From Haliotis rubra (Eukaryota): a DNA stretch of 64,000 bases. Numbering within the stretch: position 1 is the stretch's first letter; every line of letters begins with the position of its first letter. Positions 12,513 to 50,341 of the stretch are shown here, in pieces. The stretch spans positions 372,001 through 436,000 of the forward strand of contig NW_025767318.1 in NCBI RefSeq assembly GCF_003918875.1, in the 5' to 3' direction. Under the pieces are notes generated by a model. That model ran no database searches. It had not been told where the DNA came from and was given only the letters and a program-made list of their open reading frames with translations. Position numbers and translations under genes: made by a program.

Positions 12513-14368
12513 GTAAGCATCATGGGAATGCGTAGCTATGGTTATCCAACTTCCTCATCAATTCAACAGAGATGATACTATGGAAACAGAACTTCTATAT
12601 TACCATGAACGTGACGTTTCGGTTAAGACATTTACGCCTTTATTCAGAACAACTGAGATATTTCTATGGATACAGAACTGTTTTATTCAACAAATGCGGC
12701 GTTTTCGTGTAGAAATATCTCAGTTGTTCATCCCACTATTTACTTTCAAAAGGGTATTAATATTCCTCATCCGTTCATCATTTTATACCAGTTTGTATAT
12801 AAGTGAGTTGTGTTTTACGCCGTTTCATGCAGTATTTCGGCTATAGCACAGCGGAGAAAGAGCAGAGGGAGTGGCCACGTGTTACTAACGTGAAGCGACC
12901 AACCCAGGTCGAAGTATGTGTTACAACGGTTGCCAAGGATTGTTTCATTCCGCTAGGGGAATGGCAGCAAAAGCGAACAACAACAGCAGCAATTCCATGA
13001 CCGCAGAGCATTTCTGCCCATACAGCATGACAGATACTTCCATGCAGATAATGGACTCGTAGATCTCCATTTCTCTATCGGGAACACAAAGGTGTTTTAA
13101 TACACGGCTTTGATTTTGGTACCAAGTGCATTCCCGGCACTCTGTGTTTCCTGGTCCTCATTGATGATCTTTTCCAGGCCTCCAATAATTTCAATTAGTC
13201 TAAATAAATATATACTCCTAGACATAGTTTAAAGAACCAGCTTCGACACATTCCACTGAGCGTAAAAGACAAAATAGTCGTAAGAATAATATATAAATGG
13301 ATCACCGCAATATCAGTGGTAACACCGGGTGTGCGTGAACAGTATGGGTATGTTCTGCTATGCCGGTACCAAAATACATTAACAGATATAATTGGTAATT
13401 TATGTTTAATAACTTTATATCCAATATTTTCTGCAAACCAAAGACAGTATAGTCAACAGCATCGATACAAAGCATAATAACAGTTCAGTAAAATCTGTAC
13501 CTGCAAATATTCCGATCAAACAGGAATAGTCTTGAAATACAACCTTGTCTAACTCCAAATATACTTTAACGTACAACTGCTCCTTTAAATGTAAGACAAT
13601 TCTAAACAAAACTTTAGTTAGATATATCTTGTTTGTGAAAATAGTCTATCCGGTGTAAGATTATTCTTAATGGTATCTCACAATGAGAGGGATATATTGA
13701 TAAATACAGTCACGTTTGTGTTGTATCACAAGCTGGCAGTAACTTTAGCATTATTGGAAAATACTATTGCTGTTTGCTGTGCAACAACCTCTCCTTGAAA
13801 TTCAGAGAAATATCACAAGTGTCCATAAATGATATTTCTCTGTTTATGTTTATTGCTTTCCTTAGGTTTTGCTGTGGACTTTGTCCAGGTCGAATCCGTT
13901 GTTTAGTTCAACACTGTGGGTGATGGATGTGGTCCGTGTAGATGTATTTTACGACTTCGCTATAGTATCTCTTCATCTGAAGTGCCTTCTTCGTCATTAA
14001 TACCGCCGTGATGTTGCTGGAATATTGCTAAAGCGGCGTAAAACCAAACTCAGTCAGTCAGTCGTCATTAATACATGACACGTTTTATGGATAAGAACTT
14101 CTTTTTATTCTTTATACGACGTCTCAGAGCTAATCCTTGCTCCTTCCTCAGGTGAATGATGAATGATGCAGAAGCAAGAACTAGCTCTGAAACAGACACA
14201 CCTAGCTCGGAATGGACCCATACATATAAGGTTTAACATTTTCTTCAAGTCTTTACTGAATATCATGTACTCTGTGTATGTGGCTCATACTCTCAATCAC
14301 TGGTTCTATCAAGCAAACACTTGTAGCCCGGGTCAGGTGAATGTGATGTCCTTTTCCCCATTTTTTAG

Positions 14369-14570
14369 AGACATTTCCCCACAAATCTACACATCTGTGA
14401 GGATACACCGGGGAGCGTTACCCCACGGACTCGCTTCAGACAGGTTCAGAGTGGAAAGGACGCTGTTCCTCAACTACGACAACATCGCCCGCACAGTACA
14501 ACGTCGTCACATCCAGATGTGGAAGTCAACACTCACAGATATACCGACGTCGCCTTGTTATGCTTTATAA
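14369..14570 (+). CDS. Paralog A, coding exon 2
   Basis: ttttttag|A then DISPQIYTSVRIHRGALPHGLASDRFRVERTLFLNYDNI...CYAL*; same phase-2 intron position as B and D. Confidence 0.85.
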
Positions 14571-30264: not shown

Positions 30265-30386
30265 TTCAAAGAGACACGAAGCTTCATTGTCGGTATGTCT
30301 GTACGTTGAAGCCGTTAGTGTCGGAATGATTTCAGGCAAATGTTATAGGCCTGCTCTAAGCTGTAGGTTTAATGCTAGTTCTCATA

Positions 30387-30675: not shown

Positions 30676-31238
30676 TTTGTATCTGTCTTTATCATACATT
30701 TTTTCAATACAACTAGTAATATAGCAATATGAATGTGATAGTCAGTGCTGACACCAAGTTTTTATGAGAAGTATTTAATCTTGACATCACCCGATCCTCC
30801 GGTAACACCTGCACATCACTGTGGATCTATATATTTGCATTCCATTACTCTATGTTCGGTGCATTCCATTGATCTATGCACGGAGAGCACATGGCACGGA
30901 TGCAGGTCGAATTGCCACGCCAGGCTTCATAATAACAATTTCATTAATACTTTCAATTTACTGACATCTGTTCCAATGACACATTATACATGTAATTGTT
31001 CACATTGACTGATGGATTTACGTTTTGTTGCCAGTTATCATTTTGCGGACATTTTGTGTTTTACTAACATAGCACAGTGGGTTGTCTGACTTTAAGGTAA
31101 GATGTTGGTATGATTATAGTATACATTACGACACCACTGTGTTAGATTCTTTTGTCAAACAACTAAATGAAAGATTTCTTCTATATGTTCCAGTTTCTAT
31201 CACCACACCAGTTCCATTGATAGCTGAACTACTGGAAT

Positions 31239-31708
31239 ATGAACGATGTCAAGAGCTTCGAGAGTTATCAAGACGACGTTACCTTTCTCAAAACATGCCT
31301 TTATTTCATCAACAAAGAGATGGACATTGAACTAATGGCCAAGCAAGAAGGCAAAACAATGCTGCAGTACTTGAAACACATGGACAATGGCAATCAGGCA
31401 AGAGTAGTGTTTCCCCAAGGGATGAGTGTGGTGCAGGAATATAGAGAAGGGGCAAAGACCGGGGACAGCGTTCTGTACTTTGTGGGATTCATTGGCGAGA
31501 AGCTGGACACTGTGGATGAGCACGTTGTACAACAGATCTGGCAGATGGATGCTGTGCTTGTAGCTGAGTTGAACAGCCAGGAAGACATCTTGGTCTATTG
31601 CAGTGCAGAGAGAAGTCCTGGGGGTAACTGGGGGAACCTGGTGTTGTTACGACACCCCCGGGCCATACAGAAATGGAATCAACTCAAGATTCACGACCAT
31701 GCTATAAG
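31239..31708 (+). CDS. Uncharacterised protein family, paralog B, coding exon 1
   Basis: Open 470-nt exon MNDVKSF...GGNWGNLVLL...KIHDHAIR; upstream acceptor ttccag at 31193; donor ag|gtattt at 31709. Confidence 0.88.
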
Positions 31709-31937
31709 GTATTTACTATCTTACCATTCCCCTTACCCAATATAAGGGGCCGCGGGGTAGCCTAGTTATGAAAGCGTTCGCTCGTCACGCCAAAGACCCG
31801 GGTTCGAATCCCCACATGGGTACAATGTGTGAAGCCCATTTCTGGTGTCCCAGTGTCCTGTATTGGTAGGGTACTTATTTTTGTAATAAGATTAAATACA
31901 CAGTAGAGTGAAACGCCCATGTATATACTTAATTGAG

Positions 31938-32200
31938 GACCCGTGAAGATCCGGGGTAGAATAGGTCTTCAGCAACCCATGCTTGCCACAAAAGGCGACT
32001 ATGCTTGTCGTAAGAGGCGACTAACGGGATCGGGTGGTCAGGCTCGCTGACTTGGTTGACACATGTCATCGTATCCCAATTGCGCAGATCGATGCTCATG
32101 CTGTTGATCACTGGATTGTCTGGTCCAGACTCGATTATTTACAGACCACCGCCATATAGCTGGAATATTGCGGCGTAAAATTAAACTCACTCACTCACTC
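31938..32200 (+). mobile_element. Retroposon family 2, full length, in paralog B intron
   Basis: 11-bp TSD ACTTAATTGAG; (CACT)n tail. Preceded by a truncated family 1 SINE (31746-31850) and followed by a decayed family 2 copy (32250-32470). Confidence 0.9.
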
Positions 32201-33507
32201 ACTTAATTGAGTTTCAGTGATCAAGGCATGCTTAGTTCATTACTGCAGGAACACGTGAAGGTCCGGGTTTGTTAGCAGCCCATGCTTGTCGTACAAGGCG
32301 AGTAACGAGATTGGGTGGTCAGACTAGAGCATTTGTTTGATGCATATTATAGCATCCCACCTGTGTAGATCAATGGTCATAATGTCAAACACTTGATTGT
32401 CTGGTACCGTTTCAATCACAGACCGCCGCAATATTAGCTTGAATCTTACTGAGAGAGGCAAGGAACAGCTAACCAACAATCTCTATTTCTGGGTACAAAA
32501 CTCTTTATCATTAGTTTTCCTTAAATGGACGATATATAGGGCCCGTAAGTAGGTCACGACATAATGCGAGACCTTAGTACTTCCGGTGATAAAAAACGTT
32601 TTATGCCTTTTCGAATGGTCTCACGGTTGTCAGCTGACCGTAAGATACAGATAATCAGGAATAACAACTTTCCGATCTAACCATCCCTAAATTACCCAAC
32701 TATTACGACTGTCAACAGCTGTGGCAGCCAAGCATGGTTGTACACTTGGCCGGTCTAGTAAAGTCATATTTAGCGGTCGCGCAATTTGGAGCTAGAACTT
32801 GTTCTTGAATATGTGCTTGTCACCGGAAATTTGGTACCGGAAGTAAGCTGGGCCTCGTCTCGAATATCGCGCAAGTTGGCGCGCGCAAAGGGAGCAGGGA
32901 ACCAGCTTAGTACCGGAAGTAGCGCCTCGCGAGAAGGACAGACCCTATTCCGAAAGACGTAGCGACCATATTTCATGTAGTTCGTCATATAACCTTATTC
33001 ATGCTTTACCTCTCTTCATCTATTCCCATGGATGGAAAGAGTGCCTTCGTGTCCAAACTCATTGCCTAATTCCTTATCTCTACGTTTGTTTTGGTGGTAA
33101 TGTCGAAATGAAAATCAAGGGCGGGTAATCTACGGTCGAGAGAACAACGGGTAACGATCCAGGGTTAGTGTAGATTTATATGGATTCGACAGTGTACGAG
33201 GGCAAATTATGGCTGTCAGCATCTGCGGGTATTTTGAGTTTTTGTAAGGTTAATACTGTTCAAGAATTTAAAAATACGTAGAATCTTCTGTCGTTTCTGT
33301 TATATCAGCTCTGATAAACGTTTAACACAACTGAAAACCAACATTTGTCCTTTTTATGATTATTTATTCATTGTTCTCATATATTCTACAGGGATATATC
33401 TCCTGCCAACTACACGTCTATCAGCTCTGAGAAACGTTTAACACAACTGAAAACCAACATTTGTCCTTTTTATGATTATTTATTCATTGTTCTCATATAT
33501 TTTCCAG

Positions 33508-33706
33508 GGATATATCTCCTGCCTACTACACGTCTATAAGGATACATCGAGGAGTGCTGCCCCAGGGACTCGCCTCAGACAGGTTCACTATAGAGAGGAC
33601 GCTGTTCCTCAACTACGACAACATTAATCGAAGAGTACAACGTCGTCACATCGAGACGTGGCAGTCAACGCTCACAGATACAGCAACGTCGACCCGTTAT
33701 GCTTAA
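33508..33706 (+). CDS. Paralog B, coding exon 2
   Basis: tttccag|G DISPAYYTSIRIHRGVLPQGLASDRFTIERTLFLNYDNINRRVQRRHIETWQSTLTDTATSTRYA*; not in the ORF track. Confidence 0.88.
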
Positions 33707-34457
33707 TAATGTTACATATTTTTAAGCGCTCTCATTAAATTGCGATCTTTGTCAGACAGATGCAACAGAAGCTGTTCTTATTCATTTGCTGAACTTAAAC
33801 AAATGGAAGGCGAAAGTAAGTTTTTTCATGCTTTAAAGTTGGTTTAAAGTCAGTTATTCCCATATTAGGAAATACGTTTATTAGGACAATCAGGAAATTC
33901 GCAATTCCCGGCCACACAGGGTTTGACTGTAACATTCTCCGCTCATAAAGACCAAATCTAACCTAGCTGAATAGGGCTGCAATATACTCTATGTACCATC
34001 AGGGGTTGGAGGAAGGGTGAGCTGACGTCCTCATTCCGTTGGAATGTATTCTAGATTGGAGGCAGAGGCAGCAAACGGTTATCTGGATTTGAAGGAGACT
34101 CTCTCATTAGTACTTATCCACATGATAAAGCGTGTTAAGTTTAAAATCATGAATCATGTTTAAAGTCCGTTACATGGTTACACACTGCTTGAGTGTGTGA
34201 TACTTTAAAAAACTGTGATTGTCCGTGGGAACATTTTCTTTAAAATATATGACCTTTAACAGGCTTCTTTCTGCTTTCCTAAATAGTTCGTTCGAGAAAG
34301 CAGTGAAAATGGCTATTGTGGCTGATCAGGTCACAAATACACATCTCAGTTAGGACCCTGAGAGTTTAAAGATACAGCGGACAATGATTTATGTTTTCAG
34401 AAGGATTCAAGGTCATTTGTATTCAGGGCCGTTTATCAGGCGTGGCTGCATATATCT

Positions 34458-34521
34458 ATGTGTGTGCGTGCGTGCGTGCTTGCGTGCGTGCGTGCGTGCG
34501 TGCGTGTGTGTGTGTGTGTGT
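34458..34521. repeat. (GCGT)n/(GT)n microsatellite
   Basis: Direct inspection. Confidence 0.95.
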
Positions 34522-35519
34522 GGTCAGATAAGATATTATTGTCCTGTCCGAAAACAGTATTAACAGGAAACTACCCTGGGAAACCGAAAGCTGGAACGTT
34601 CAAGGTCGAAGCTGCATCAAGATCGATCACTGGTTCAGAACAGGCAGTTGCATCTGGGTTAATGAGTATTATCCAACACGTTTTTCATTTGTTGTTGTTG
34701 TGGGTAAAATCAGGAAATAGGCAGAACACCGTATGCCCGTGTGAGAAGTCAAATTAGGGACTGAAACCCCTTAGTTTGGCCTACCTCCCGAGTTCTATCC
34801 GATGTTGAGCTGCTGTTGCTGATGTTGAGTTGCCGAGCTGTGTATCAGTCAATTGTCAGAAGGTGAGATGCTCTGAAGGAATATAGCACCAGTTGTTTGT
34901 CACCTGGCTGGTATTCTACGTTGGCTGCTAGAGCTGGACTGATGCGCCAGACTCGGGTGAGGAATGGTGTTTCTCAGTGTCGTTGCAGATGTGGGACATT
35001 TACTGGAGACAAAACATACTGCTTTCTGGATTTTGACGACAGGCAAAACGGGGAATATTGAATGTCGATGTCTGACCGTAGGGAGTGCCACTGCAATGAA
35101 AACGATTTGGACAATATCAGTATGTTTCTAATTTAGTCGGATTGACCAAGTGTTGGAAGATGGCAGAAAAGATGGTGTTTTCTTGGAAATATCCCACAAG
35201 GTAATGTCGCAATGAAAAGTCGTAGAAGCTGGACTTGTCTCGCTCTTATAAGGTACAGTCACACATCTGGAAACTGCTCCCTGACGGATTTTCTCGAACA
35301 GTCAGGATAGTTCCAGACGTGCATCATTACAACAACCATAAAGTACTAGATGTCAAGGTCACTGCCCATTCCTTCCAGGTGATGCAGGATTGTGTTGTCG
35401 TCTTGCTCGGAATGTACCATGTTAGTCAGTTGGCAGGGTCATCAGACTCAGTAAGTCAGCTTAGCTGTCATCGTATGGCATGGTGACAATCAAGAATTGT
35501 TTGGTGCAGACTCCATTGT

Positions 35520-36790
35520 TTACACACAACGCACAACTGTACTGTCAACTGCTGAAAACAAATACATACTCCGTAACACTGCTGATGCAACAGCCTCATG
35601 ATGAGACCAATAACGGAAACAGTATTCCCGGATATGTGTGGAAGGAAACAGAAACTGGAAAATTCGGGACTTGCATATCTTCATCTCTAACTCAACTGAG
35701 CGTGGATGCTTCCCGTATGCCAGCTAACGACAACATCGACATTGTAGTTGGTAACCTCACCGACATTATTCAAAGCACTGCTGTGTTGTGTGATTTGGAA
35801 AGGAGACCTAAGTATAATAAATCTCATAACTCTACTGTATGGTACGACAGCGAATGTGAACTACTGAAATCACAGAAATTCAAATTATTAGACAATTTTA
35901 CACTACCTGGAAGTAAAGAGTTATTAAAGGAATATGTTCATGCAAGAAATAATTACAGATATTTATGCAGACAGAAAAAGAGAAAATTTTATACGAACAG
36001 TTCCAAATTCACAATTTAGTGGACAGTTCCAAGGACAGCAAAGTATTCTGGCAAAACCTAAATAAGATGACAAACAACAGGAAAAGCACACCCCTAATAA
36101 ATCAGGAACAGTAGACTGATTATTTTAAAGACACTTTTAACTTCACGGACAATACAGTGGATGAATCAAAACTAGAAGAAGCTGCCCATGCATTAGACAA
36201 CCACTGTGAACTCGACCACATGACATCATGTATTTACTGAACAGAGACGTATCGCTCCAAGATATTGAAGCAGCCATTAAAGACATGAAATCGGGTAAAG
36301 CAGCCGGTCCTCCGGGCGGTATTAAAGCAAAGATGGTGAAATTATGTGCTGATCTCTTAAGTCCATGTCTAGTCATTGTACGTAATATCATCCTAACCAA
36401 AGACGAATATCCTATTGAATGGACCAAGGGATCAATAGTACCACTGCTCAAGAAAGGCGACATTAACTCAGTCAACAACTACAGAAGTATCTCACCCGTG
36501 GACATTTTCGGAAAGATATTTTGCTTTATTCTAAACAACCGCCTACAAACATTTGCAACACTTTATGGCAAGATTCCAGGAGCTCAAGCAGGATTTTGGA
36601 AAAACTGCAACACAACTGATAATATTTTTACGTTACAATGTTTAATCCAGAAATACCCATCAAGGCGAGGTGGCAGATTTTATTCAATATTTGTGTTTGA
36701 ATTCTATGAAAGAAAACGTCTCTGGTATTCATTATTAAAGAATGATATTCATTGACGAATTCTTTACGTGCTAAAGAACATGTACTCCAA
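35520..36790 (+). mobile_element. Degenerate LINE ORF2 fragment (RTE-type)
   Basis: WYDSEC, GSIVPLLKKGD...NNYRSIS, QAGF...TTDNIFTLQCLIQKY. Confidence 0.75.
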
Positions 36791-36799
36791 AATCATGTC

Positions 36800-39700
36800 T
36801 GCTGTCCGAATAAGCAACCCCTCAATCTGTTTAAAATATTTATTAATTTTTTTAATGAACGGATTGGTAAACAGGCTATAAGCCTATATAAATACCTCTC
36901 CGAATACAATGCGATGGGAAACATTTTACATACATTCATCGTTACAGACAAGAGAACACACCATTTGAAGAGTAAAAGACTTAATGAAAAGACAGTAGTA
37001 TAATTAATCAATTAGGTAAAAATCGTTTTGTTAAGGTAAAATAGTCATGTACAGATTTTACAATATTTTCATTGATTTCGTCAGAATATGAGTAACTTCC
37101 ACATAATACAGATTGAATATTCTAACCATTTATGTAATAGAAACACTTCGATCGAATTGTAGTAAACTTTGGACAGATAAATAGAAAATGAATGGCATCT
37201 TCATAATGATGGCCACAAGAGCAAGTAGACGTATTTTGAAGAAAACGGTCAAATTTATGTGCATTTAAGTCACTACAGCCAAGTCTTAACTTACAATGAA
37301 TTATTTGGTTAAATCTAGTTCCAGTGTTTCTGAAGACATGATGTACATTGGATGAGACAGTTCGATCAAAGTGTTTCTTGAACATGGCAACGGAATCTAT
37401 GTTTCTTATATCATTATCTAACTTGTTCCACTCCATCACAGAGGATGGTAAAAATGATTTTTTTTATGTTTCCGTACGACATAATGGTACTTGGAGTATA
37501 TTACTAGATCTAGATTCATATGTGGATACAGAGGATATGTTTATTGGAATTAGATCTGATAAATACTTTGGAGTTTTATTATGGAACATTTTATGAAATA
37601 CACACATTTGGTGATTTTTGCGACGTTCCCTTAATGATGAAAAACCAGTTTCATGATAGATTTTGGAATGGCTGACTCCTCTAACAGATCCACATATCGT
37701 TCTTAAAGCATCTAAGTTAAGTTTTTCTAACAATAACTCTTGAGTTTGTGTACAGTTGTTCCAAATATAATCACAATAGTCAAAAAGTGGTAAAACAAAT
37801 GAACTATACAGGGTTTGGAGGGTTTTCCTCTGAAGGCGGTATTTCAGACTTCTTAAACAATTGATCATAGGACTAACTTTAGAAATAATATCATCTATAT
37901 GTGTATTCCAGTGGCCATCGCTTTGTAAAGTCAGCCCCAGATGTTTATGAGTGTCAACAGACTTTATCGGTATATCATTCATTATAAGATCTGGCATTGA
38001 TGTTACTGTTTTCTTTCTAGTAAAAATGATAGATTCAGTTTTATTGGGATTTAAAGTCTACTTTCCATGTCTGGGCCCATTTAGCTATTATTTCTAAATC
38101 ATCATTTAACATATTGGAAGATAAAATAGGGTCATCAATTATCACATATAAGGATGTATCATCGGCAAATAATTTAATATTACACTGTATATCTTCAACA
38201 ATATCATTGATATAAACCAAAAAGAGTAAAGGTCCTAGGACTGATCCCTGAGGGACGCCAGCTTCAATTGATTTAACATTTGATTTATACCCACTTATTA
38301 CTGTAAACTGTTTTCTATTATTTAGATAATTTTCAAACCATAATAAAAGAGATCCGCGGATTCCACTAGCCCATAACTTATGCAAAAGACCCTTGTGCCA
38401 AACCCTATCAAACGCTTTGCTTATATCGCAGAATACAGCGCGTACCTCCTTGCCACTATCCATCGCCTTAGCTATATAGTCATACAAATGAGTGAGCTGG
38501 TATGATGTAGAATCACCAGTCGTGAAACCTGACTGTAATGAAGTGATAGTTCCATTATCTAGGAAAAGAATTGACACATGTTTAAAAACACACTTCTCAA
38601 ATACTTTTGAAAGACAACTAGTAAGTGAAACCGGTCGATAATTAGTATAATCATGAACATTATTTTTCTTATAAATTGGAACAACGGATGAACATTTCCA
38701 TATATCTGGGAACTGAGAAGAGGACAAAGAAATATCAAACAGGTTACAAAGTGGAATGGACAATTCTTCAGCTAAACATTTTAAGACACGATTGCTAAGA
38801 TGATCTGGACCAGTTGCTTTAGTGACATCAAGCGACAGTAAAATATCCCTTACTTCGTAATTTTATATCAGTGAGACAATGTTTAACATTAATATCAGAA
38901 TATACATCGACATCATCAGAAGAACTGTTAACCGTTGCCATACTCACAAAGTAGTCATTAAAAATATTTGCTTTGTCAATATCATCTTCATAAACAACAT
39001 CATTGTGTTCAATGTGTGGAAATATCTTAGCTTTGTCTGTTTTCTTAAGATAATTTTTAACAATCCGCCACCAAGATTTACTACCATGTTCTGCATTGAC
39101 AACATTATCAAGTCTTTCAACATACAATGACTTACTTTTACGTATCTCTGAGATAAGCTTATTTCGACTTTTTCTAAATTTTCCCCAATCATTAGGCAAG
39201 TTACTACGTTTAGCCTTTCTATGAATTCTGTTTTTCTTACACATGAGTTTTCTGATAAATCCGTTCATCCATGGAGCATCATTTGGACGAATCACAACAG
39301 TTTTGTTCGGAATATTTGATTTACATAAATCTGTTAATGTATTAACAAATTTGGAAGCAGAGGCATCAACATCATCATTTTGTGTAAGAAAATCCCAATT
39401 AACATCAGCCAAATCTGCCGAAAAGAATTTATATCAATATTATCGTAATTATAAATGAATCTTGAAAAGGCTTCTTTCGTCTGTTTAATAGATTTCAGCC
39501 ACACGCTTACTGAACAATGGTCACTGCAGAATGGGGGAGTAACACCAGAGGATTTTACAATATCAGGACAAGATACAAATATTAGGTCAATAAGTGTCCT
39601 CGATTGTTGAGTAATTGTCTTAATATGTTCGATATTAGGATCTACTCTATTCAACAAATTAGCATTGAAATCCCCAAGTACTACAGTCTTAATAATAGTA

Positions 39701-40030
39701 TCTATAGCTAAGCCAATTCATTCTTCAATCAGATTCCAGTAGTGGGAACTTATATTTACACGATAAAATTATTAAACGTACCGACAACATAACTCTTATT
39801 TACACGTGATCTGTGCCCACACTGCCTCTAGTCCTGGGAAGTTGTAAGTCAGGCCTATGCTTACAGTAAATAGAGTCTTTCACATAAATTGCAACCCCAC
39901 CTCCCTTAGTTTGTCTATCATTACGGAATGGCGGATGAAACCCAGGCATTAGAGTGTCATAATTTGAAATACCATCATGCAGCCAAGTTTCTGATATACA
40001 TATAACATCATGTTCATGAAGTTCTGCGTA
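36800..40030 (-). mobile_element. CR1/L2-type LINE ORF2 pseudogene (endonuclease + RT)
   Basis: HDVICISETWL, CDISKAFDRVWHKGLL, GVPQGSVLGPLLFL, LFADDT, CSCG...HFLFICP; frameshifted. Confidence 0.9.
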
Positions 40031-40034
40031 AACT

Positions 40035-40459
40035 AAATAATGTGTAACATGTAATAATGTGTAACATGTAATAATGTGTAACATGTAATAATGTATATCA
40101 TGTTATAATGTGGAACATGTAATAATGTGGAACATGTAATAATGTATAATATTTCATAATGTATAACATGTAATAATGTGTAACATGTAATAATGTATAA
40201 CATGTAATAATGTGTAATATGTAATAATGTATAACATGTAATAATGTGTAACATGTAATAATGTATAACATGTAATAATGTGTAACATGTAATCATGTAT
40301 AACATGTAATAATGTGTAACATGTAATCATGTATAACATGTAATAATGTGTAACATGTAATAATGTGTAACATGTAATAATGTATAACATGTAATAATGT
40401 ATAACATGTAATAATGTGTAACATGTAATAATGTGTAACATGTAATAATGTATAACATG
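40035..40459. repeat. 17-bp minisatellite
   Basis: Unit TAACATGTAATAATGT(G/A), ~25 copies. Confidence 0.95.
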
Positions 40460-41337
40460 CATATTGCCTTGTCAACAATGAAATTTTGTATCATGTGATT
40501 GTCCATGGACCGATGGCCTACTTACAGAAATAAACACATTCATTTATTCAGACCGCTGACATATAGCTGGAATATTGCTGAGTGCGGAGGTAAACAAGAA
40601 TCAAACCAACCAGATACTATTCTATATAAGTTGTTTCTCTGTGGTAGAGAAGACATTGACCCTCGTGTAACACATCAAATATGTAAGTATCATGTTAACT
40701 ATTTCTTCGTCTGGATAAGTGTATTTGTGTCATGTTACATGGAACAATATACATATAGTTTGTAAGATAGTTATAACCTTATTACGCTTAAATTAGTTGT
40801 CCATATATTATGTTATCTACCGGGCTCCTACAATAGTTGTAGCTTACTGAATGTTGTAACAGGTAACAAAAGAGGACATCTTACGTGTCATGTGAAACTG
40901 ATAGGCACTGCTGCGAATTTGATGACTACATTGTGGGTGGGAAAAAAGAACATTATTACCTTCCTACGACCTGTAGTGTTTGCTTGACAAGTTTGCTTTT
41001 AATCCCCTGGCCTGCTTCAGCTACAGTATCAATGACACGGGATACACAAATGTGCTTTGACACACATACCGAGATCGTAGCTACATTGTGTCATGTGCCA
41101 TTGTAGTCTACTGCCATGACTGTGAAAATACAGCGTTGTAACACACCTGTCCAGAATACATAATGACAATGTAACCATGGTGATTTCATCATTATTCAGA
41201 AATAGTGCAACGGATATATCGTTTAGATACAATTTTAGTTCGTTGAAAACCTTATGACGTGATGCCGTTATGACTTATTTTGTGTGCCTCAGGGCAGCCT
41301 TATTAAGAGACACTGCTGGCGGAGACAAATACCCATT

Positions 41338-41885
41338 CGGCAGCTTCAAGGTTGTTTCACCTCCAACAGCTTCAAGACCAGTTCCTTTTCAACAGCTTCG
41401 AGGTTAGTTTCCCTACAACAGCCTAAAGACTAGTTCCTCTGTCTTCAACAGCTTCAAAATTGGCTCCTCTTCAACAGCTGAACGTCTCCTCTTCAACGGC
41501 TGAACGTCAAGTTACCTTCAACAGCTTCTAAAACTAAATAATTTTCAGCAGCTTCAAGACTAGTTCCCTTCAACAGCTCCAAGACTAGTTCCCTTCAATT
41601 GCTTCAAGACTAGTTCCCTTCAACAGCTTCAAGACTAGTTCCCTTCAATTGCTTCAAGACTAGTTCCCTTCAACAGTTTCAAGACTACTTCCCTTCAATT
41701 GCTTCAAGACTAGTTCCCTTCAACGGTTTCAAGGCTAGTATCACTTCAACAGCTTCAAGGCATGTTTCCTTCAACAGCTTCAAGGTAAGTTCCCCTTCAA
41801 CAGTTTCATAACTAGATCCCTTTCACCAGCTTCGAGACCAGTTCCCGCTCAACAGCTTGAAGAATAATTTCCTTGAACAGTTTCA
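41338..41885. repeat. 25-bp minisatellite upstream of paralog C
   Basis: Unit CAACAGCTTCAAGACTAGTTCCCTT, with a homogeneous core at 41550-41730. Confidence 0.9.
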
Positions 41886-42580
41886 GAATTACATCCTCTT
41901 TGAAAGAATCAACACAAATTATTTCATCATCTTCAAGAATGCCTCAATTACAACAAACAAAAGGACGTCCAGTGGTATGTAGAAATCTTTATTACTCACC
42001 GGTTGAAGATATCACTGTTTAATAAATCTACAATGTTAGTACACAGTGATGCCGAACGTATGACGTCATAATTATTTACAGTTATGACGTCTCATAGCTA
42101 ATCTTACCTCTGTCACAATGGTATTGGATCTTGCTTGACTCGCGAAATGCTGAGAGTCATCACACTTTAGGCAGTTTCTACCAATTTATGTTTGAGAATA
42201 GTAAACAGAATACTCTCAGTTATTTGCCAGGTCCATTTCGGTAAAAGGATGAATATGTATGACAATTGAATGAGTGGGTCATTAAATCAGTGCTGACATC
42301 AGGTGTTCACGAAAAGGGTGAGCAGGTTCCGATCAGCTGCCGCCACACACTACAATGGTGCTATACATGGGCTGTCCAAGGCATTCATTAACAGCACATT
42401 ATACGGATGCAACCATACTGGAGGTTTGGCAAACAACAACATAAAACAGTTGCATGACCAGTATCTATTACAACACCGGCGTGTTGGATTCGTATTTAAA
42501 CAACAACATGACAGACATGCTCTACATGTTCCAGTGTCAATCACCTCGTCGACACCGGTAGATCTGTATAAAGCTGGAAT

Positions 42581-43050
42581 ATGAACAATGTGAAGAGCCT
42601 CGAGAGTTATGAAGGCGATTTTGAATTTCTAATAAAATGCCTTGACTTCATCAACACGGAGATTGACATTGGACTAATGGCAAAGCAAGAAGGCAAAACA
42701 ATGCTGCAGTACTTGAAACACCTGGACAATGACCATCAGGCAAGAGTAGTGTTTCCCCAAGGGATGAGTGTGGTGCAGGAATATAAAGAAAGGGCAAAGA
42801 CCGGGGACAGCGTTCTGTATTTTGTGGGATTCATTGGCGAGAAGATGGACACTGTTGATGAGCACGTTGTACAACAGATCTGGCAGATGGATGCTGTGCT
42901 TGTAGCTGAGTTGAAGAGTCAGGAAGACATCTTGGCCTACTGCAGTGCAGAGAGAAGTCCTGGGGGTAACTGGGGGAACATGGTGTTGTTTCGGCACCCC
43001 CGGGCCATACAGAAATGGAATAAACTCAAGAGTCACATACATGCTATAAG
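42581..43050 (+). CDS. Uncharacterised protein family, paralog C, coding exon 1 (no private exon 2 found)
   Basis: Intact 470-nt exon; acceptor ttccag at 42533; donor ag|gtactc at 43051. Confidence 0.85.
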
Positions 43051-43974
43051 GTACTCACCAGCTTTCCCATTTGCTTATTATGTCACTCTTTATGCACTTT
43101 ATGAATGAACTCTGATTTGTGTAATTTCTAATTTTGACTCATTGACTCTTTCTTAATGAACAGCGGCAAATACAATACCAGCATTACAATGAATTTTCAG
43201 ACAAATTATTGGAAAATGATTCCTGTTTGTAAAATAATCATCATAAATCTCACATACGTTTTTCTTTCTACTTTTTGGTCAGGTGGAGTCGGTGATAACT
43301 TTCGTAAGCCCGGTACTTAAATTATGTATCACAGTGCTACGTACATTCTTTGAAACAAAGAAACGCCAAAGCCAATTTTAGAAGAATTTATTGCGCTAGT
43401 TTAAGAGCAGTTATGTCATGTTATTTCAATGGTAAAGAGGTGAAAATGCATACATTCGCCAAAACAACAGCAACCTTTATTGTTTTGTTTCTGTTTACTT
43501 GAGTCTACAAGATGGCGCAAAGTCAGTACTTTGTATGGCCCCCATTGGTAGAAATTACTGCTCGGCACCGCCTCGGCACAGAGTGGATAAGTCGACGAAG
43601 TCGCTCTTACGGAATTATTCCACACTCTTCCTGCAATGCGATGGCCAGGTTTGGAAGTGTCTGAGGCGTGTTTTGACGTTGACGTACACGTTGATCGAGT
43701 TCATCCTCGAGTGACAGACTGGCAGCGTCATTACTTGACCTTCGTGACGTGATTACAGATCTATCATATTTCACTAGACACATGAAATATTATCTATCTA
43801 TTATCTACAAAGGTAGCACAGTAGGTGAGCTAACAACGAGATAACAGATTTGCTCTGTATGCTCAAGTGTGTTAGGATCATCCCTCACAACTCAAGATAA
43901 GAAATTTGCTATATATATATTCCAGTGTCTATGACCATACTAGTGTGTTCGGGTGATCTTGGAAAAACTAGAAC

Positions 43975-44444
43975 ATGAACGTTGCAAAAAGCCTCGAGAG
44001 TTATGAAGACGATCTTACGTTTCTTAAAACATGCCTTGACTTCATCAACAAAGAGATGGACATTGAACTAATGGCAAAGCAAGAAGGCAAAACAATGCTG
44101 CAGTACTTGAAACACATGGACAATGGCAATCAGGCAAGAGTAGTGTTTCCCCAAGGGATGAGTGTGGTGCAGGAATATAGAGAAAGGGCAAAGACCGGGG
44201 ACAGCGTTCTGTACTTTGTGGGATTCATTGGCGAGAAGCTGGACACTGTGGATGACAGCATGGACAAACAGGCCTGGCAGATGGATGCAGTGCTCATAGC
44301 CGAGTTGAAGAGTCAGGAAGACATCTTGGCCTACTGCAGTGCAGAGAGAAGTCCTGGGGGTAACTGGGGGAACCTGGTGTTGTTCCGGCACCCCCGGGCC
44401 ATACAGAAATGGAGTCAACTCAAGATTCACGACAATGCTATAAG
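43975..44444 (+). CDS. Uncharacterised protein family, paralog D, coding exon 1
   Basis: Intact 470-nt exon; acceptor ttccag at 43925; donor ag|gtactc at 44445. Confidence 0.88.
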
Positions 44445-44639
44445 GTACTCACCAGGTTTCCAATCTACTTTTTTTACTGGTGCAGTTTTTCAAGCCTTAT
44501 TTATATTATATATTTTGATCAGTTTTCGAAATGTACATACGCCAGGGTTTTAATAGTATGATAATAGTGGGAAACACCCACCTAGATACAAAACTGAAGA
44601 TTTAGTAAGCAATGAAAGGTTGGTTCATTCTAACTGGAA

Positions 44640-45040
44640 TCCATGAGCAGATGGGTTGAAATTGGTCTTCATCATAACATGCTTATCCCCGGTGAACATC
44701 CGGGTAAGACGTGGTCTCCAACAACCCAGTCTTCTACCGATGGAACATTCGGGTTAAAACTGGTCTTCAAACCATGCTTGTCCCCTGTGAAGATCAGATG
44801 AGAATTGTTCTTCAACAAACCATGCTTGTCGCCCGTTAACATCCGAGTTAGAAATTATCTTCAGCAGCCCATGGGGTCAGACTCACTGCCTATGGTGCAT
44901 GTCATCGTACCCCAGTTGCTTAGATCGATGCTCCTGCTATCAATCACGTGATTGTCGAGACCAGATTAAGTGCAAACCGCCGTCACATAACAGGAATATT
45001 GAGGAGTGTAGCGTTACAAAAAAACCCCGAACAAACAAGC
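44640..45040 (+). mobile_element. Decayed family 2 retroposon with ~5 tandem copies of its 5' module
   Basis: Repeated CC(C)GTGAA(G/C)ATCCGGGTTAGAA..GGTCTTCA..AACCCATGCTT-like units precede a single body and tail. Confidence 0.65.
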
Positions 45041-45446
45041 AAACATTCTCGCTGGATGCAATCTTAAACCTCGACGCCATTTCCTGACTATAGTTTGGTC
45101 TGAAAAAACTTCCACAAGAATCTGTTTTCGTCAGTGACACAGTTCCGTCTTAATCTATGGAATGCTTTCAGGGTGGACCGCAGTGTCTTATCTATCTAAT
45201 GTCATCTGTTTGTTTCAGACAGTATCTTAAAGAGAATACACTATGTTATGTCTTGTTTCAATGGTCGCTTGTTTAGCCGAAGTGGCCCCCTGTCAGGGAA
45301 GACTATTGCTGAGAAACGCAAAAGACTCTTTCTTCAATCACCGTGTATCGGAATTATACACGAGATTTGATGGAAGAAGTGTCATTAAGTAATTGGGGAG
45401 CCACTAAGTCTTCTTATAGATGAAGAAAACATTTCGTTCATATCCA

Positions 45447-45591
45447 CACGCCGAAGACCCGGGTTCGATTCCCCACATGGGTACAATGTGTGAAGCCCCT
45501 TTCTGGTGTTCCCCGCCATGATATTGCTGGAATATTGCTAAAACTAAACTAAACTCACTAACTCACTCACTCACTCACTCACTCACTCACT
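45447..45591 (+). mobile_element. 5'-truncated family 1 SINE
   Basis: B box, body, (CACT)n tail, TSD TCGTTCATAT. Confidence 0.85.
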
Positions 45592-46188
45592 CGTTCATAT
45601 TCATGATTATTTAACTAATTATTATAATTTTGCGTTTTTTCCATTGGATGAGACACAGCGCATGACAGCGAAATTTAACGACAGTTTTCGTCTTTCATCT
45701 ATTTTTCACGAAACTGATTTCTTGAAATGACCTTGAAATTCTTGAGAAAGTCCCATTAACGATTAAATACAGAAGTTTTGCCTTTGATCATAAAGACAAT
45801 TTATCTTAATCTCTGCATTTGAGTATACCATCATAAAGACAACTCAAAGAGTGTGACGAACATCTTCGCTGCGACCCATCCAAATGAACGAATCTAGCAC
45901 CAACGTCCCTACAGTTTGGCGCTCACATTTGGCAGAATCATACTCAAAAACACTCGAAGTGAAAATCAATTTTAACAATTGTACTTCCTCGCGATGTTCC
46001 GTCTCTATAAATACAGTCGTTCTGGTGTAGCATGCAGAGACTACCATTCCCTTAGCAATCATCCAAACACCCACCCGTGCATGTTCCCTGCGCGCACTAG
46101 TCTTGTGCATATCCCCTGAACCAAACCACGCATCCGCTTGTGCTTGAGCAGTGTACGAATACATATTGACTTGTCTCATGTTTTCCAG

Positions 46189-46387
46189 GGATATATCTCC
46201 TGCCTACTATACGTCTATAAGGATACATCGTGGAGTGCTACCCCAGGGACTCGCCTCAGACAGGTTCACTGTAGAGAGGACGCTGTTCGTCAACTACGAC
46301 AACATCACCCATACAGTACAACATCGTCACATCGAGGCGTGGCAGTCCACGCTCACAGATACACCAACGAGGCCCAGTTATGCTTAA
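46189..46387 (+). CDS. Terminal coding exon for paralog D (and probably C)
   Basis: ttttccag|G DISPAYYTSIRIHRGVLPQGLASDRFTVERTLFVNYDNITHTVQHRHIEAWQSTLTDTPTRPSYA*. Confidence 0.88.
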
Positions 46388-48289
46388 TGATGTTACATGT
46401 TACATTTACTATGGACTTTTGTTACAATATGTGTATGTTCTTGTTGCTTGACTATTTAAGTGCTGCTTCTTGTTATATTTAAGTTTGGTTTGGGAGCTCA
46501 CATTGGTCACTCCACATAGTTATTCAAAATGACAGATTACATGTACTTAACATATTTGAAAATTCATTTATCCAGAAAAGTCCTTGATAAATCGCATGTG
46601 TCGCAATTTCACTCTTTGTCACATTTACCCACTCAACTTTTATCACGACCAAACATAACAGAATAGGTTCTACAGAAAGATAATATATATGGACAAACAA
46701 CTTCCTTAATACAATAGACAAAAATTCAAAAAGTGCACTGGCGTACCATTCATGTTTAAGATGTGCCACTCAATTTTATTTCATTTTTAAGGTTCAACTC
46801 TTACAATCTTACCCTATTGTATAGTCAACTGGCATCTCCAGTTGAAACCCTGAAAACCTAATCCACTGTAAAAACACTTAATCTATATCCCGCGCGTTTG
46901 AATCCAATATTCGCCTTATAATGTTTCTTGATCACTTAGCACCACACTAGTATATACCCCATCTCGATCGTCAACTTGTAACATTATAAAATGTGGCGGG
47001 TTTTCAACGAGAGAACAGGGAATACATCAAAGCATGATAAAAATGACGATGTGAATAAAATCCATTGATACGACATTGAAGTGTTTTGTCTTATCCTCTG
47101 TGCTCTCTGAAGATTGTGGTTTGGAATTTGCTGATACAGCTGAAACTTGAATAGGCAAGTTTCGCTATCAGTGCGCCACGATAACGCATTGTAGAACTGT
47201 GAATAACATACTGCGTACTTCCCGGCATGCTGTGCACTCTCCTACCCAGAGTTCCATGCGGCCAGCCAGCATAGTACCTCTGCCACAGGCCAGAAAGACG
47301 TTTCGTCACATCTTGCACCGTACATTCAATATAATCTACATATTTCTGAACTCTTTTATTTTTGACGAGTCTACACATCTAATTAAACATCTCTGCTAGA
47401 ATGGTTTAGTTTCACCGAGAAAATATCCTAAAACTTGTAACACTATTTCGATTTGCGTAGCGATCCTTTGTTTACATACTTTGTACGGCTCCGCGTACTG
47501 TCATCGAAGCCGACGGAGAGCAAACGATGCAACCAGTTTGATATCTAAATATGTACTGTCATAAATGTTACTGTCGCAGTTGTGGAAGAATATATATGGT
47601 ACAATGTAAAATATTGTGAAGAGCGCGCCGAAAAGCTTGCGTAAGGCCAGTCTCTTCTTATTGTGAATATGCGCGTTTGTTTACAAACAAGAGAAAAGTC
47701 CGGTCACGTGATATGCAAATTAGCTTGTGGGTGTGATGTTATGCTAAGTCATCACTGCGCCGGAGTGTGCATGCTGTGTGGACTGTTTCTAAAATCAACC
47801 AAAGTACACTCACGTACTTGCTGTACCCAATCCACGTCTACTCCGCCCCAGTTGTAAGCTGATGCTGTAAACACACTGAAGGAGGGAATTTGCAGTGTTG
47901 CGTTGGCTTCAGACGTGGCCCTTGGACCACGGCATCTCAAGATGTTTACTTTTTGGGGCTGGAACCTCTGAAAATCCAACCAGGATCATCGACGTTGCAA
48001 GCGAACGCTTTAACTACTGGGCTATCACGCTGGGCGCGCATTTTCTGACGCGACGTAAAACTACATCAGCAGCCGAAAGGATTCACGGGTGGTGGAGGAA
48101 AATATACTTTCGCCTAGATTAAATAATACAGCATAAGTGTCACCTACATTGAAAACACAACGGATGCGTCACAGATTTATTTACATTCAATTTAGAAACA
48201 GGTGTGTCACGCAAACACATTTGGCCTCAGTGGAAAAGACAGTAGATGTATGAACTAATTGACAAACACAGTATATGTATGGCCTGAAA

Positions 48290-49890
48290 GAAAAACACAG
48301 TAGAGGTTTGGCGTAAGTGTAAAACACAGGAAATTGTGACCAAAGTATAAAACACAGTAGATTGGTACCAAAGTGTAAAACACAGTAGATTGGTACCAAA
48401 GTGTAAAACACAGTAGATTGGTACCAAAGTGTAAAACACAGTAGATTGTGACCAAAGTGTAAAACACAGTAGATTGTGACCAAAGTGTAAAACACAGTAG
48501 ATTGTGACCAAAGTGTAAAACACAGTAGATTGTGACCAAAGTGTAAAACACAGTAGATTGTGACCAAAGTGTAAAACACAGTACATTGTGACCAAAGTGT
48601 AAAACACAGTAGATTGTGACCAAAGTGTAAAACACAGTACATTGTAACCAAAGTGTAAAACACAGTAGATTGTGTAAAAACACAGTAGATTGTGACGAAG
48701 TGTAAAAACACAAAGTGTAAAACACAGTAGAGTACCAAAGTGTAAAACACAGTAGATTGTGACCAAAATGTAAAACACAGTAGATTGTGACCAAAGTGTA
48801 AAACACAGTAGATTGTGACCAAAGTGTAAAACACACAGTGTTGACCATTGTAAAACACAATTGTGACCAAAGTGTAAAAACACAGTAGATTGTGACCAAA
48901 GTGTAAAACACAGTACATTGTGACCAAAGTGTAAAACACAGTAGATTGTGACCAAAGTGTAAAACACAGTACATTGTGACCAAAGTGTAAAACACAGTAG
49001 ATTGTGACCAAAGTGTAAAACACAGTACATTGTGACCAAAGTGTAAAACACAGTAGATTGTGACCAAAGTGTAAAACACAGTACATTGTGACCAAAGTGT
49101 AAAACACAGTAGATTGTGACCAAAGTGTAAAACACAGTACATTGTGACCAAAGTGTAAAACACAGTAGATTGTGACCAAAGTGTAAAACACAGTAGATTG
49201 TGACCAAAGTGTAAAACACAGTAGATTGTGACCAAAGTGTAAAACACAGTAGATTGTGACCAAAGTGTAAAACACAGTACATTGTGACCAAAGTGTAAAA
49301 CACAGTAGATTGTGACCAAAGTGTAAAACACAGTACATTTTGACCAAAGTGTAAAACACAGTAGATTGTGACCAAAGTGTAAAACACAAAACACAGTACA
49401 TTGTGACCAAAGTGTAAAACACAGTAGATTGTGACCAAAGTGTAAAACACAGTAGATTGTGACCAAAGTGTAAAACACAGTAGATTGTGACCAAAGTGTA
49501 AAACACAGTAGATTGTGACCAAAGTGTAAAAAACACAGTACATTGTGACCAAAGTGTAAAACACAGTACATTGTGACCAAAGTGTAAAACACAGTAGATT
49601 GTGACCAAAGTGTAAAACCAAAGTGTAAAACACAGTAGATTGTGACCAAAGTGTAAAACACAGTAGATTGTGACCAACAGTAGATTGTGACCAAAGTGTA
49701 AAACACAGTACATTGTGACCAAAGTGTAAAACACAGTACATTGTGACCAAAGTGTAAAACACAGTACATTGTGACCAAAGTGTAAAACACAGTACATTGT
49801 GACCAAAGTGTAAAACACAGTAGATTGTGACCAAAGTGTAAAACACAGTAAATGTACGGCGTAAGTGTAAAACACAGTAGATGTATGGCC
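48290..49890. repeat. 28-bp satellite array (~55 units)
   Basis: Unit AAAACACAGTA(G/C)ATTGTGACCAAAGTGT; has no stop codons on the minus strand, which produces the 511-591 aa spurious ORFs. Confidence 0.97.
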
Positions 49891-50341
49891 TGAATGTATT
49901 GATCGGGAAGCCAGGTTTCGACTCACACGGGGTTTTTTTATTTCTTGTCTATCAATCCCCAAAGTAGGTGACCTTTTATATAGATGACCTTCTACAGCTG
50001 GCGGGCCAATACGATTCTTGAAAAAATGAATAATGATAAAGATCCCATATCTATTTTAGCTGAGACGTTTGGGCATTTTGTGAACTTGTAACCGGCAGAA
50101 AACACGTGCATGTGGTGTTACCCGGTACAAATTTAGAGTATCCACACTCTCAAACAAAAGGAACCAGCTTTGCGATTCCGGGTTAGAATCGGCACAGGGC
50201 AGCCGACACTGGTCTGAAGCGACCAAATAAATCGGGTGTTCAGGCACTTTGTTTGACTGCGAATCAGTGTACATTGACGGCTCACAATATTTACAGTATT
50301 ATTACGTCTCTTTTGTTTGTGCACCGCTCTCGTCCAGCGAT

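What the first reader, a model, noticed from the sequence alone, without database searches (positions are those of the whole stretch)
42533..46387. Two variable first exons (C and D) upstream of one shared terminal exon
Exon C is intact, with its own acceptor and donor, but no DISPAYY exon occurs between 43051 and 43925. Splicing C into D's acceptor hits TGA after about 10 codons. Splicing C to 46189 is in frame and gives a full-length protein. This resembles an incipient variable-exon/constant-exon arrangement (UGT1- or protocadherin-like) with alternative promoters, created by partial duplication.
Basis: partly seen in the sequence, partly recalled or inferred. Interest (0 to 1): 0.7.

Follow-up and report, generated by a model that had tools for sequence, protein, structure and literature searches.

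The report
Orphan duplicate first exon in abalone
In a blacklip abalone gene cluster, an intact extra copy of a gene's first coding exon sits just upstream of the complete gene and could be spliced to the same last exon; two abalone species share this layout, but no RNA data show that the extra exon is used.

Summary
The window is Haliotis rubra. It carries a tandem family of a two-coding-exon gene: exon 1 is 157 codons and exon 2 is 65 codons.

- **Anatomy.** Exon C (ATG 42581, donor 43050|GT) is intact and has no exon 2 of its own. Exon D (ATG 43975, donor 44444|GT) and one terminal exon (46189-46387) follow. Joining C to D's upstream AG stops after 10 codons. Joining C to 46189 is in frame.
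- A second contig of the same assembly, DNA contigs of a related abalone and the H. asinina genome show the same layout.
- **Age.** The arrangement predates the rubra/asinina split, so it is not "incipient". H. cracherodii and H. rufescens have one exon 1 and one exon 2.
- **Selection.** C, D and paralog B exchange sequence by gene conversion. C shows purifying selection between species (omega about 0.31, D 0.25) and no indels. In H. rubra it evolves faster than D, and its TATA-like motif has decayed.
- **Protein.** It belongs to an unnamed family with a predicted ABM-like alpha+beta barrel. Exon 2 supplies three core strands, so C needs it.
- **Expression.** No RNA evidence could be obtained. 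RefSeq annotates only D plus exon 2.

Verdict: a real, old, splice-competent alternative first exon whose use is unproven, about even odds against a relic kept by gene conversion.

The parts
42460..42534 (+). Promoter-proximal flank of exon C. It is homologous to the flank of paralog B (31118-31193).
   Evidence: blastn; alignment; contexts
42535..43050 (+). Exon C: a 46-nt leader, then ATG 42581, 156 codons plus 2 nt, and a phase-2 donor AAG|GT. The frame is intact and all family-invariant residues are kept except L134M.
43051..43925 (+). C-D spacer. It holds no exon-2 homolog and no AATAAA/ATTAAA. Positions 43342-43706 are a dispersed repeat, with more than 1600 first-look candidates in the genome.
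   Evidence: very high contig depth
43926..44444 (+). Exon D: a TATA-like (TA)n at 43911-43920 just upstream, ATG 43975 and donor 44444|GT. It is part of RefSeq protein XP_046545863.1, which starts at M28 (ATG 44056).
44445..46188 (+). Intron between D and the terminal exon. Its first ~230 nt are homologous to the intron of the single-copy H. cracherodii gene. It contains a tRNA-derived SINE and an (ACTC)n run at 45408-45595.
46189..46387 (+). Shared terminal exon. The acceptor is TCTCATGTTTTCCAG|G. It encodes 65 codons (DISPAYY...SYA) and ends in TAA. It supplies the end of a helix and the last three beta strands of the predicted barrel.
31239..33706 (+). Paralog B, a complete gene (exon 1 31239-31708, exon 2 33508-33706) equal to RefSeq XP_046545878.1. 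It is a gene-conversion partner of C and D.
12017..14570 (+). Paralog A, a divergent copy (exon 1 about 40% identical at protein level). A 1-nt deletion in a G run near 12425-12432 shifts the frame. Exon 2 is 14369-14570.

Best explanation
Exon C is the retained head of an old partial duplicate of a two-exon gene. The head comprises the promoter-proximal flank, the first coding exon and 29 nt of intron. It lies 0.9 kb upstream of the complete gene, D plus the terminal exon.

C kept its ATG, reading frame and phase-2 donor. The spacer has no poly(A) signal, no conserved exon and no strong acceptor. Any transcript that starts at C would therefore most simply be spliced 43050^46189. That gives a full-length 222-residue protein whose first 157 residues are the C version. 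Transcripts that start at D give the D version.

The locus is thus a two-member 'variable first exon / shared last exon' unit. It formed before H. rubra and H. asinina split, and gene conversion with D and B keeps it partly uniform. I take C to be a minor, weakly constrained alternative first exon.

Shown: the anatomy, the frame compatibility, the age, the gene conversion, omega below 1 and the absence of indels. Inferred: promoter activity at C, the 43050^46189 junction, and any role of the C isoform.
For: Anatomy and frame.

Age and orthology:
- H. asinina L001 is colinear: a decayed B-like copy, C-like 12064-12531, D-like 15306-15773 and one exon 2 at 21179-21376.
- The C-type and D-type leaders and C-specific residues (N3, D51, S151, H154) are shared across the two species.

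Constraint on C:
- rub_C versus asi_C gives omega 0.29-0.33 by three methods. D gives 0.19-0.25.
- In codons 1-35, which show no recent conversion, pN/pS is 0.34 (Fisher p = 0.006).
- There are 0 gap openings in 470 coding nt, against 1.94 per 100 nt in alignable flanks, so about 9 were expected.
- All near-invariant family residues are kept except the conservative L134M.

Need for exon 2:
- The conserved core of 378 relatives spans residues about 78-195, across the exon junction at residues 157/158.
- In the AlphaFold model (pLDDT 89.8), strands 164-174, 184-194 and 199-207 come from exon 2.

No other outlet for a C transcript: the spacer has no poly(A) signal, and the only conserved in-frame acceptor is 46189.

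Annotation: RefSeq for H. asinina treats the C-like exon as coding (XP_067664195.1).
Against: - No RNA evidence exists. The two runs offered were DNA contigs.
- No protein with a C-type head joined to exon 2 is in the 5.8-billion-protein collection. RefSeq for H. rubra annotates only D plus exon 2.
- Substitutions unique to rub_C are 10 nonsynonymous to 2 synonymous, close to the neutral ratio. There are three times as many as in rub_D (12 versus 4).
- Exon C differs from its H. asinina ortholog by 13.8%. D differs by 9.4% and the flanks by 17.5%.
- The TATA-like motif kept by B, D and H. cracherodii is degraded in C of both species.
- Sequence upstream of about 42526 is not alignable between the two species.
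- Gene conversion tracts cover most of the middle of the exon. These could explain the open frame and the low omega without any selection on C.
- The H. asinina RefSeq model joins the C-like exon to a spacer exon, not to exon 2. That spacer exon's acceptor is lost in H. rubra (CAG to CAA).
Confidence: 0.48

Rival explanations
1. Exon C is a dead relic. It is the head of a partial duplicate that is not productively expressed. Its open frame, donor and low between-species omega persist only because gene conversion from the working copies D and B keeps overwriting it.
For: - The exon is a mosaic. In H. rubra, nt 105-260 are nearly identical among B, C and D, and nt 261-312 of C match B (2 mismatches) but not D (12). 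In H. asinina, nt 261-416 of C and D are identical or nearly so.
- Within-species C-D dS is 0.13-0.18, against 0.24-0.37 between orthologs.
- Changes unique to rub_C are 10N:2S and three times as many as in D.
- pN in the non-converted N-terminus (0.16) is about equal to the non-coding mismatch rate (0.175).
- The TATA-like motif is decayed and the upstream sequence is not conserved.
- No C isoform is annotated or present in protein collections.
Against: - Conversion did not rescue other copies in the same clusters. The B-like exon 1 of H. asinina has a deletion. Copy A is frameshifted and an inverted copy is decayed.
- The ends of C that escaped recent conversion still show no indel (3 expected, P about 0.05) and pN/pS of 0.41 (p = 0.02).
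- In H. asinina, C and D have equal numbers and kinds of unique changes (7N:5S each).
- ATG, donor and invariant residues are all kept in two species.
Confidence: 0.4
2. Exon C is transcribed but serves as a non-coding or regulatory leader. Transcripts from C include D through the AG at 43925. The C frame then ends after 10 codons and the message is a target for decay, or C acts as a long upstream reading frame that damps D.
For: - An AG preceded by TTCC is conserved before C and D in both H. rubra and H. asinina.
- The H. asinina RefSeq model uses that AG before the C-like exon.
- C joined to 43926 stops after 10 codons.
- RefSeq's D protein starts at M28 rather than M1, which hints at an unusual 5' end.
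Against: - The AG reads AC in H. cracherodii, and the tract before it is a TATA-like run rather than a good pyrimidine tract.
- A non-coding leader would not need omega of 0.3 or an indel-free frame.
- The upstream exon of the H. asinina model lies in retroelement-derived sequence, and its donor is absent in H. rubra.
Confidence: 0.1
3. Assembly artefact: an exon 2 belonging to C, or the whole spacer, was lost or collapsed in this assembly.
For: The assembly does contain a low-quality duplicate contig of this very region (C1919).
Against: - C1919 has the same order and a C-to-D spacing of 1370 nt, against 1394 nt in the window.
- Contigs of a related abalone cover C, parts of the spacer and D.
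- The chromosome-level H. asinina assembly also has no exon 2 between the C-like and D-like exons.
Confidence: 0.02

Closest known systems
Multiple-variable-first-exon clusters (UGT1A, clustered protocadherins, GCNT2; see PMC1885805)
   Same: Homologous first coding exons lie in tandem. Each has its own ATG and 5' donor. They precede shared downstream exon(s) that complete the protein. They arose by tandem duplication and show gene conversion between variable exons.
   Different: There are only two variable exons here. No promoter or RNA evidence exists. The constant part is a single 65-codon exon that completes the same domain, rather than adding a separate constant domain. One of the two exons (C) shows relaxed constraint.
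Tandem exon duplication giving substitution isoforms or mutually exclusive exons (reviewed in PMC9013439, PMC9741552)
   Same: An exon was duplicated inside or next to a gene. The two copies are about 82% identical at protein level and have the same phase. Including both would be unproductive (a stop after 10 codons).
   Different: The duplicated exon carries the start codon and probably its own core promoter. The choice would therefore be made at transcription initiation, not by splicing of internal exons. Use of both copies has not been shown.
Partial ('headless' or 'tailless') gene duplicates kept similar by gene conversion, such as the GST duplicate reported earlier in this genome (s1-329494)
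   Same: A fragment of a tandem duplicate has an open frame, lies next to the intact gene, shows clear conversion tracts and has no RNA data.
   Different: Here the fragment is the 5' part with ATG and donor. It lies upstream of the intact copy, so it needs no extra signal to yield a full-length message. It is also shared by two species.
ABM / Dabb-type dimeric alpha+beta barrel proteins (e.g. PDB 2bbe, 1x7v, 1y0h, 5b08)
   Same: The predicted fold of the encoded protein resembles them (Foldseek probability 0.99-1.0, TM 0.6-0.7 on the roughly 100-residue targets). The feature search pointed to DUF3291/ABM/DUF4188 clusters.
   Different: No Pfam model reaches its threshold. Sequence identity to solved structures is 9-18%. 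The protein is twice as long, with an extra N-terminal helix and strands. Its function is unknown.

Membership tests
Variable-first-exon / constant-exon gene cluster (UGT1A, PCDH type) | Two or more homologous first exons in tandem, each with its own start codon and 5' splice donor | tested here: met
   C (ATG 42581, donor 43050|GT) and D (ATG 43975, donor 44444|GT)
Variable-first-exon / constant-exon gene cluster (UGT1A, PCDH type) | One set of downstream constant exons, with phase compatible with every variable exon | tested here: met
   There is a single exon 2 at 46189-46387 and none between C and D. Both donors are phase 2, and joining either to 46189 is in frame.
Variable-first-exon / constant-exon gene cluster (UGT1A, PCDH type) | Each variable exon has its own active promoter | not testable with these tools
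   Only sequence hints exist. A TATA-like motif about 55-62 nt before the ATG is intact in D and B and degraded in C. No CAGE or RNA data are available.
Variable-first-exon / constant-exon gene cluster (UGT1A, PCDH type) | Transcripts joining each variable exon to the constant exon are observed | not testable with these tools
   The run search returned only DNA contigs. D joined to exon 2 exists as RefSeq XP_046545863.1. No protein joining C to exon 2 is in the collections.
Variable-first-exon / constant-exon gene cluster (UGT1A, PCDH type) | Variable exons are kept by selection, so orthologous exons are conserved across species | tested here: inconclusive
   C and D are both orthologously present and intact in H. 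asinina. Omega is 0.31 for C and 0.25 for D. Gene conversion and the 10N:2S unique changes in rub_C leave it open.
ABM-like dimeric alpha+beta barrel superfamily | Ferredoxin-like beta-alpha-beta fold matching solved ABM/Dabb structures | tested here: inconclusive
   The AlphaFold model has pLDDT 89.8. The best Foldseek E-value is 2.6e-3, TM is 0.6-0.7 on the target and 0.3 on the query, and no hit has E <= 0.001.
ABM-like dimeric alpha+beta barrel superfamily | Match to Pfam ABM (PF03992) or a related model above the gathering score | tested here: not met
   There are no hits for the abalone proteins. One of 50 relatives matches ABM at E = 7.7e-4.

The most novel reading that the evidence does not exclude
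The abalone lineage leading to H. rubra and H. asinina turned a single-copy barrel-protein gene into a small variable-head / constant-tail unit. Two promoters would deliver two N-terminal versions, which differ in the long N-terminal helix and in the helix that crosses the exon junction, onto one shared C-terminal sheet. Gene conversion would keep the barrel core uniform while the ends diverge. This would be a young invertebrate example of how UGT1/protocadherin-type clusters begin. A similar head duplication is possibly visible in a mussel homolog.
Probability: 0.2. Interest if true: 0.5.

Novelty: new member of a known kind. Interest (0 to 1): 0.3.

Why it matters
If C is used, this is a compact and datable case of how a partial tandem duplication creates alternative first exons with a shared tail. 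It would come with a natural control, because the single-copy gene persists in North Pacific abalones. It would also show gene conversion and divergence acting on different parts of the same exon. If C is not used, the locus is a useful warning. An orphan exon can stay open and splice-competent across a species split through conversion alone, so 'intact ORF plus good splice sites' is not evidence of use. Either way the annotation matters. RefSeq models of this locus disagree between species: D only in H. rubra and C only in H. asinina. The encoded family is widespread in marine invertebrates and bacteria and has no name.

Tried and rejected
- **RNA evidence.** The look-up of sequencing runs (kind rna) returned two runs of one sample with no RNA on record. 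Read laying showed they are genomic contigs of a related abalone, since introns are covered, there are 2-5% differences and no exon-exon joints appear.
- **Annotation coordinates.** The look-up of encoding contigs does not serve the window's own genome, so the exon structure of XP_046545863.1 could not be read.
- **Contig C1919 as a neutral comparator.** It first looked like a decayed paralog in which both exon-1 copies carry stops. Its 81% stretch has 362 gap openings per 624 mismatches, mostly 1 nt. That is the signature of unpolished long-read sequence. I therefore used it only as a second witness of the exon order.
- **The H. asinina RefSeq model as a template for H. rubra.** Its last exon has lost its acceptor in H. 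rubra. Its first exon lies in retroelement sequence without a donor in H. rubra. I rejected it as a conserved structure.
- **Family assignment.** Pfam, PDB sequence search and Foldseek gave no significant family.
- **Literature.** A search for the two LOC identifiers found nothing.
- **Antisense frames.** The 120-122-codon open frames over exons C and D have no Pfam match and are taken as chance.
- **Joined C plus exon 2 protein.** The natural RefSeq protein of paralog B (P0001) stood in for searches and folding.
- The N run at 3232-3374 was left alone.
Full report
**What is there.** The window is from blacklip abalone, Haliotis rubra. Two proteins encoded in it are RefSeq entries of that species. 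The window holds a tandem family of a small gene with two coding exons. Exon 1 has 156 codons plus two bases and ends in a phase-2 donor, AAG|GT. Exon 2 has 65 codons and starts D-I-S-P-A-Y-Y.

The copies are as follows.
- A: exon 1 at 12017-12513, divergent and frameshifted; exon 2 at 14369-14570.
- A decayed inverted exon-1 relic at 15774-16728.
- B: exon 1 at 31239-31708 and exon 2 at 33508-33706. This equals XP_046545878.1.
- C: exon 1 only, ATG 42581 to 43050.
- D: ATG 43975 to 44444, followed by the last exon at 46189-46387.

In the whole assembly the family occurs only here and on one small contig, C1919.

**Checking the observation.**
- Exon C is open from ATG to donor, and its donor 9-mer is identical to D's.
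- tblastn and blastn find no exon-2-like sequence between 43051 and 43925.
- Reading from C's donor into the AG-defined start at 43926 gives ten codons and then TGA. Reading into 46189 gives the full 66-codon tail.
- The spacer has no AATAAA or ATTAAA. The first such signal after exon 2 is at 47054.
- About 365 nt of the 875-nt spacer (43342-43706) is a dispersed repeat, with more than 1600 first-look candidates in the genome.

**Is it an assembly slip?** No.
- Contig C1919 of the same assembly is colinear with window 32858-48459. Its two exon-1 copies are 1370 nt apart, against 1394 nt in the window.
- The 81%-identical half of C1919 has 362 gap openings per 624 mismatches, most of one base. 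I read it as an unpolished long-read haplotig and not as a decayed paralog.
- Genomic contigs of a related abalone, 2-5% different, cover exon C, parts of the spacer and exon D. The only indel listed inside C is an in-frame ATT insertion at a codon boundary.

**Age and origin.**
- The H. asinina locus L001 is colinear block by block. It has a B-like copy with a deleted exon 1, a C-like exon (12064-12531), a D-like exon (15306-15773) and one exon 2 (21179-21376). There is no exon 2 between the two heads.
- The leaders before the ATG are of two types, C-type and D-type. Each type is shared by the two species. Residues N3, D51, S151 and H154 mark C in both.
- The duplication therefore predates the split of these species, so the arrangement is not incipient.
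- H. cracherodii and H. rufescens have a single exon 1 and a single exon 2, 5-7 kb apart, within 10 kb on either side.
- Their exon and the first ~230 nt of their intron align best with D. D with its intron is therefore the ancestral gene body, and C is the added head.
- Homology between C and D covers only the exon, a short upstream flank and 29 nt of intron.

**Gene conversion.** The exon is a mosaic.
- In H. rubra, nt 105-260 are almost identical among B, C and D. Nt 261-312 of C match B (2 mismatches) and not D (12 mismatches).
- In H. asinina, nt 261-416 of C and D are identical or nearly so.
- Within-species dS between C and D is 0.13-0.18, half the orthologous dS of 0.24-0.37.
- Only the two ends, codons 1-35 and 140-156, keep a C identity.

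**Is C constrained?** The evidence points both ways.

For constraint:
- rub_C versus asi_C gives omega 0.29-0.33 by NG86, YN00 and ML. D gives 0.19-0.25, and the single-copy pair cracherodii/rufescens gives 0.10-0.13.
- In codons 1-35, pN/pS is 0.34 (p = 0.006).
- There is no gap in 470 coding nt, although alignable flanks carry 1.94 gap openings per 100 nt. For the unconverted ends alone, about 3 were expected (P about 0.05).
- All near-invariant residues of the wider family are kept except L134M.
- In H. asinina, C and D have the same number and kind of unique changes, 7N:5S each.

Against constraint:
- Changes unique to rub_C are 10 nonsynonymous to 2 synonymous and three times as many as in rub_D.
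- Exon C differs from its ortholog by 13.8%. D differs by 9.4% and the flanks by 17.5%.
- pN in C's N-terminus (0.16) is close to the non-coding rate.
- Conversion from working copies could carry much of the apparent constraint.

**Promoter versus acceptor.**
- The motif is intact in B, D and H. cracherodii. In H. cracherodii the AG reads AC. The motif is degraded in C of both species (CTCTACATG in H. rubra, GCCCTATG in H. asinina).
- I read these as first exons with a TATA-like core promoter rather than internal exons.
- The AG is used in the H. asinina RefSeq model XP_067664195.1. That model's upstream exon lies in retroelement-derived sequence and its donor is absent in H. rubra.
- The same model's last exon sits in the spacer, and its acceptor is CAA in H. 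rubra. Neither exon is a conserved structure.
- RefSeq models disagree between species. H. rubra has only D (from M28) plus exon 2, and H. asinina has only the C-like exon.

**The protein.**
- No Pfam model fits, and no solved structure matches by sequence.
- An exhaustive HMMER search finds 378 relatives of about 200-230 residues. Those with names include proteins of Pinctada, Lottia, Mytilus, amphioxus and an acorn worm. Many others are unnamed.
- The feature search gave mostly bacterial clusters, some carrying DUF3291, ABM or DUF4188.
- An AlphaFold model of paralog B built with 50 relatives is confident (pLDDT 89.8, pTM 0.87).
- Its best Foldseek matches are roughly 100-residue ABM/Dabb-type dimeric alpha+beta barrels, with TM 0.6-0.7 on the target and E-values of 2.6e-3 and weaker. 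This is a lead, not a membership.
- For this finding the key point is where the exon junction falls. The conserved core (residues about 78-195) spans the junction at 157/158, and exon 2 supplies three core strands. A C product without exon 2 would be an incomplete domain.

**How it most likely works.**
- If RNA polymerase starts at C, the pre-mRNA runs through D to the poly(A) signal after exon 2.
- C's donor then has one good partner, the pyrimidine-rich acceptor at 46189. The product is a full-length protein with the C head.
- Starts at D give the D head.
- This needs no new signal beyond some promoter activity at C, which is why I rate use as about even.
- The main rival is a relic kept open by conversion.
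- A third option is that C-D-exon 2 transcripts act as decay targets or as a long upstream frame.

**Comparison with known systems and limits of this work.**
- The layout is that of multiple-variable-first-exon clusters (UGT1A, PCDH, GCNT2; PMC1885805) and of tandem exon duplication in general (PMC9013439, PMC9741552).
- The two defining features that concern expression could not be tested here.
Searches were done exon by exon or with the natural RefSeq protein of paralog B.

Noticed in passing
window 12425-12432 (exon 1 of copy A): A 1-nt deletion in a G run shifts the frame of copy A. The downstream frame still encodes the conserved GDWGNLVIF...HDKAVR and ends at a good donor. This is either a young pseudogene or a homopolymer error of the assembly.
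   Followed up: partly
window 15774-16728, minus strand: A decayed inverted fragment of an exon-1 copy, with stops and frame changes, split by a tRNA-derived SINE at 16334-16496. It shows what an unconstrained copy in this cluster looks like.
   Followed up: partly
window 33303-33534: A 116-nt tandem duplication (97% identical) doubles the acceptor and the first 14 codons of B's exon 2. Use of the first acceptor (exon start 33392) would shift the frame. RefSeq uses the second (33508).
   Followed up: no
G000 contig C1919 (17,684 nt; loci L015, L016): A small contig colinear with window 32858-48459. It is 94% identical in one half and 81% in the other, with a large excess of 1-nt gaps. It is probably an unpolished long-read haplotig left in the assembly, and its gene copies look broken for that reason.
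   Followed up: yes
protein P0005 (Mytilus coruscus, 261 aa): The mussel homolog contains a full exon-1-like part, a second copy of the latter half of that part (from FIGF to HHIAIR) and then one exon-2-like tail. Head duplication before a single tail may recur in this family, or the gene model may be fused.
   Followed up: no
window 43342-43706: A dispersed repeat of about 365 nt, with more than 1600 first-look candidates in the genome at 81-88% identity, makes up much of the C-D spacer. It is also present at the orthologous place in H. asinina.
   Followed up: partly
window 48175-50000 and 39951-40562: A 28-nt satellite of more than 40 units lies just downstream of the gene and is present at the same place in H. 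asinina (L001 23498-23825). A 17-nt satellite lies upstream. A further tandem repeat at 41323-41900 resembles one upstream of copy B (30366-30595).
   Followed up: no
window 37464-39412 (minus) and 25375-26169 (plus): Reverse-transcriptase open frames (Pfam RVT_1, E = 4e-28 and 4e-23) of retroelements lie between the gene copies. The first exon of the H. asinina RefSeq model lies in sequence homologous to the element at 36228-36830.
   Followed up: partly
window 45408-45595 and six other places (16334, 28888, 29492, 31747, 50349, 63507): A tRNA-derived SINE family followed by an (ACTC)n microsatellite. It has extremely high depth in the related abalone's contigs.
   Followed up: no
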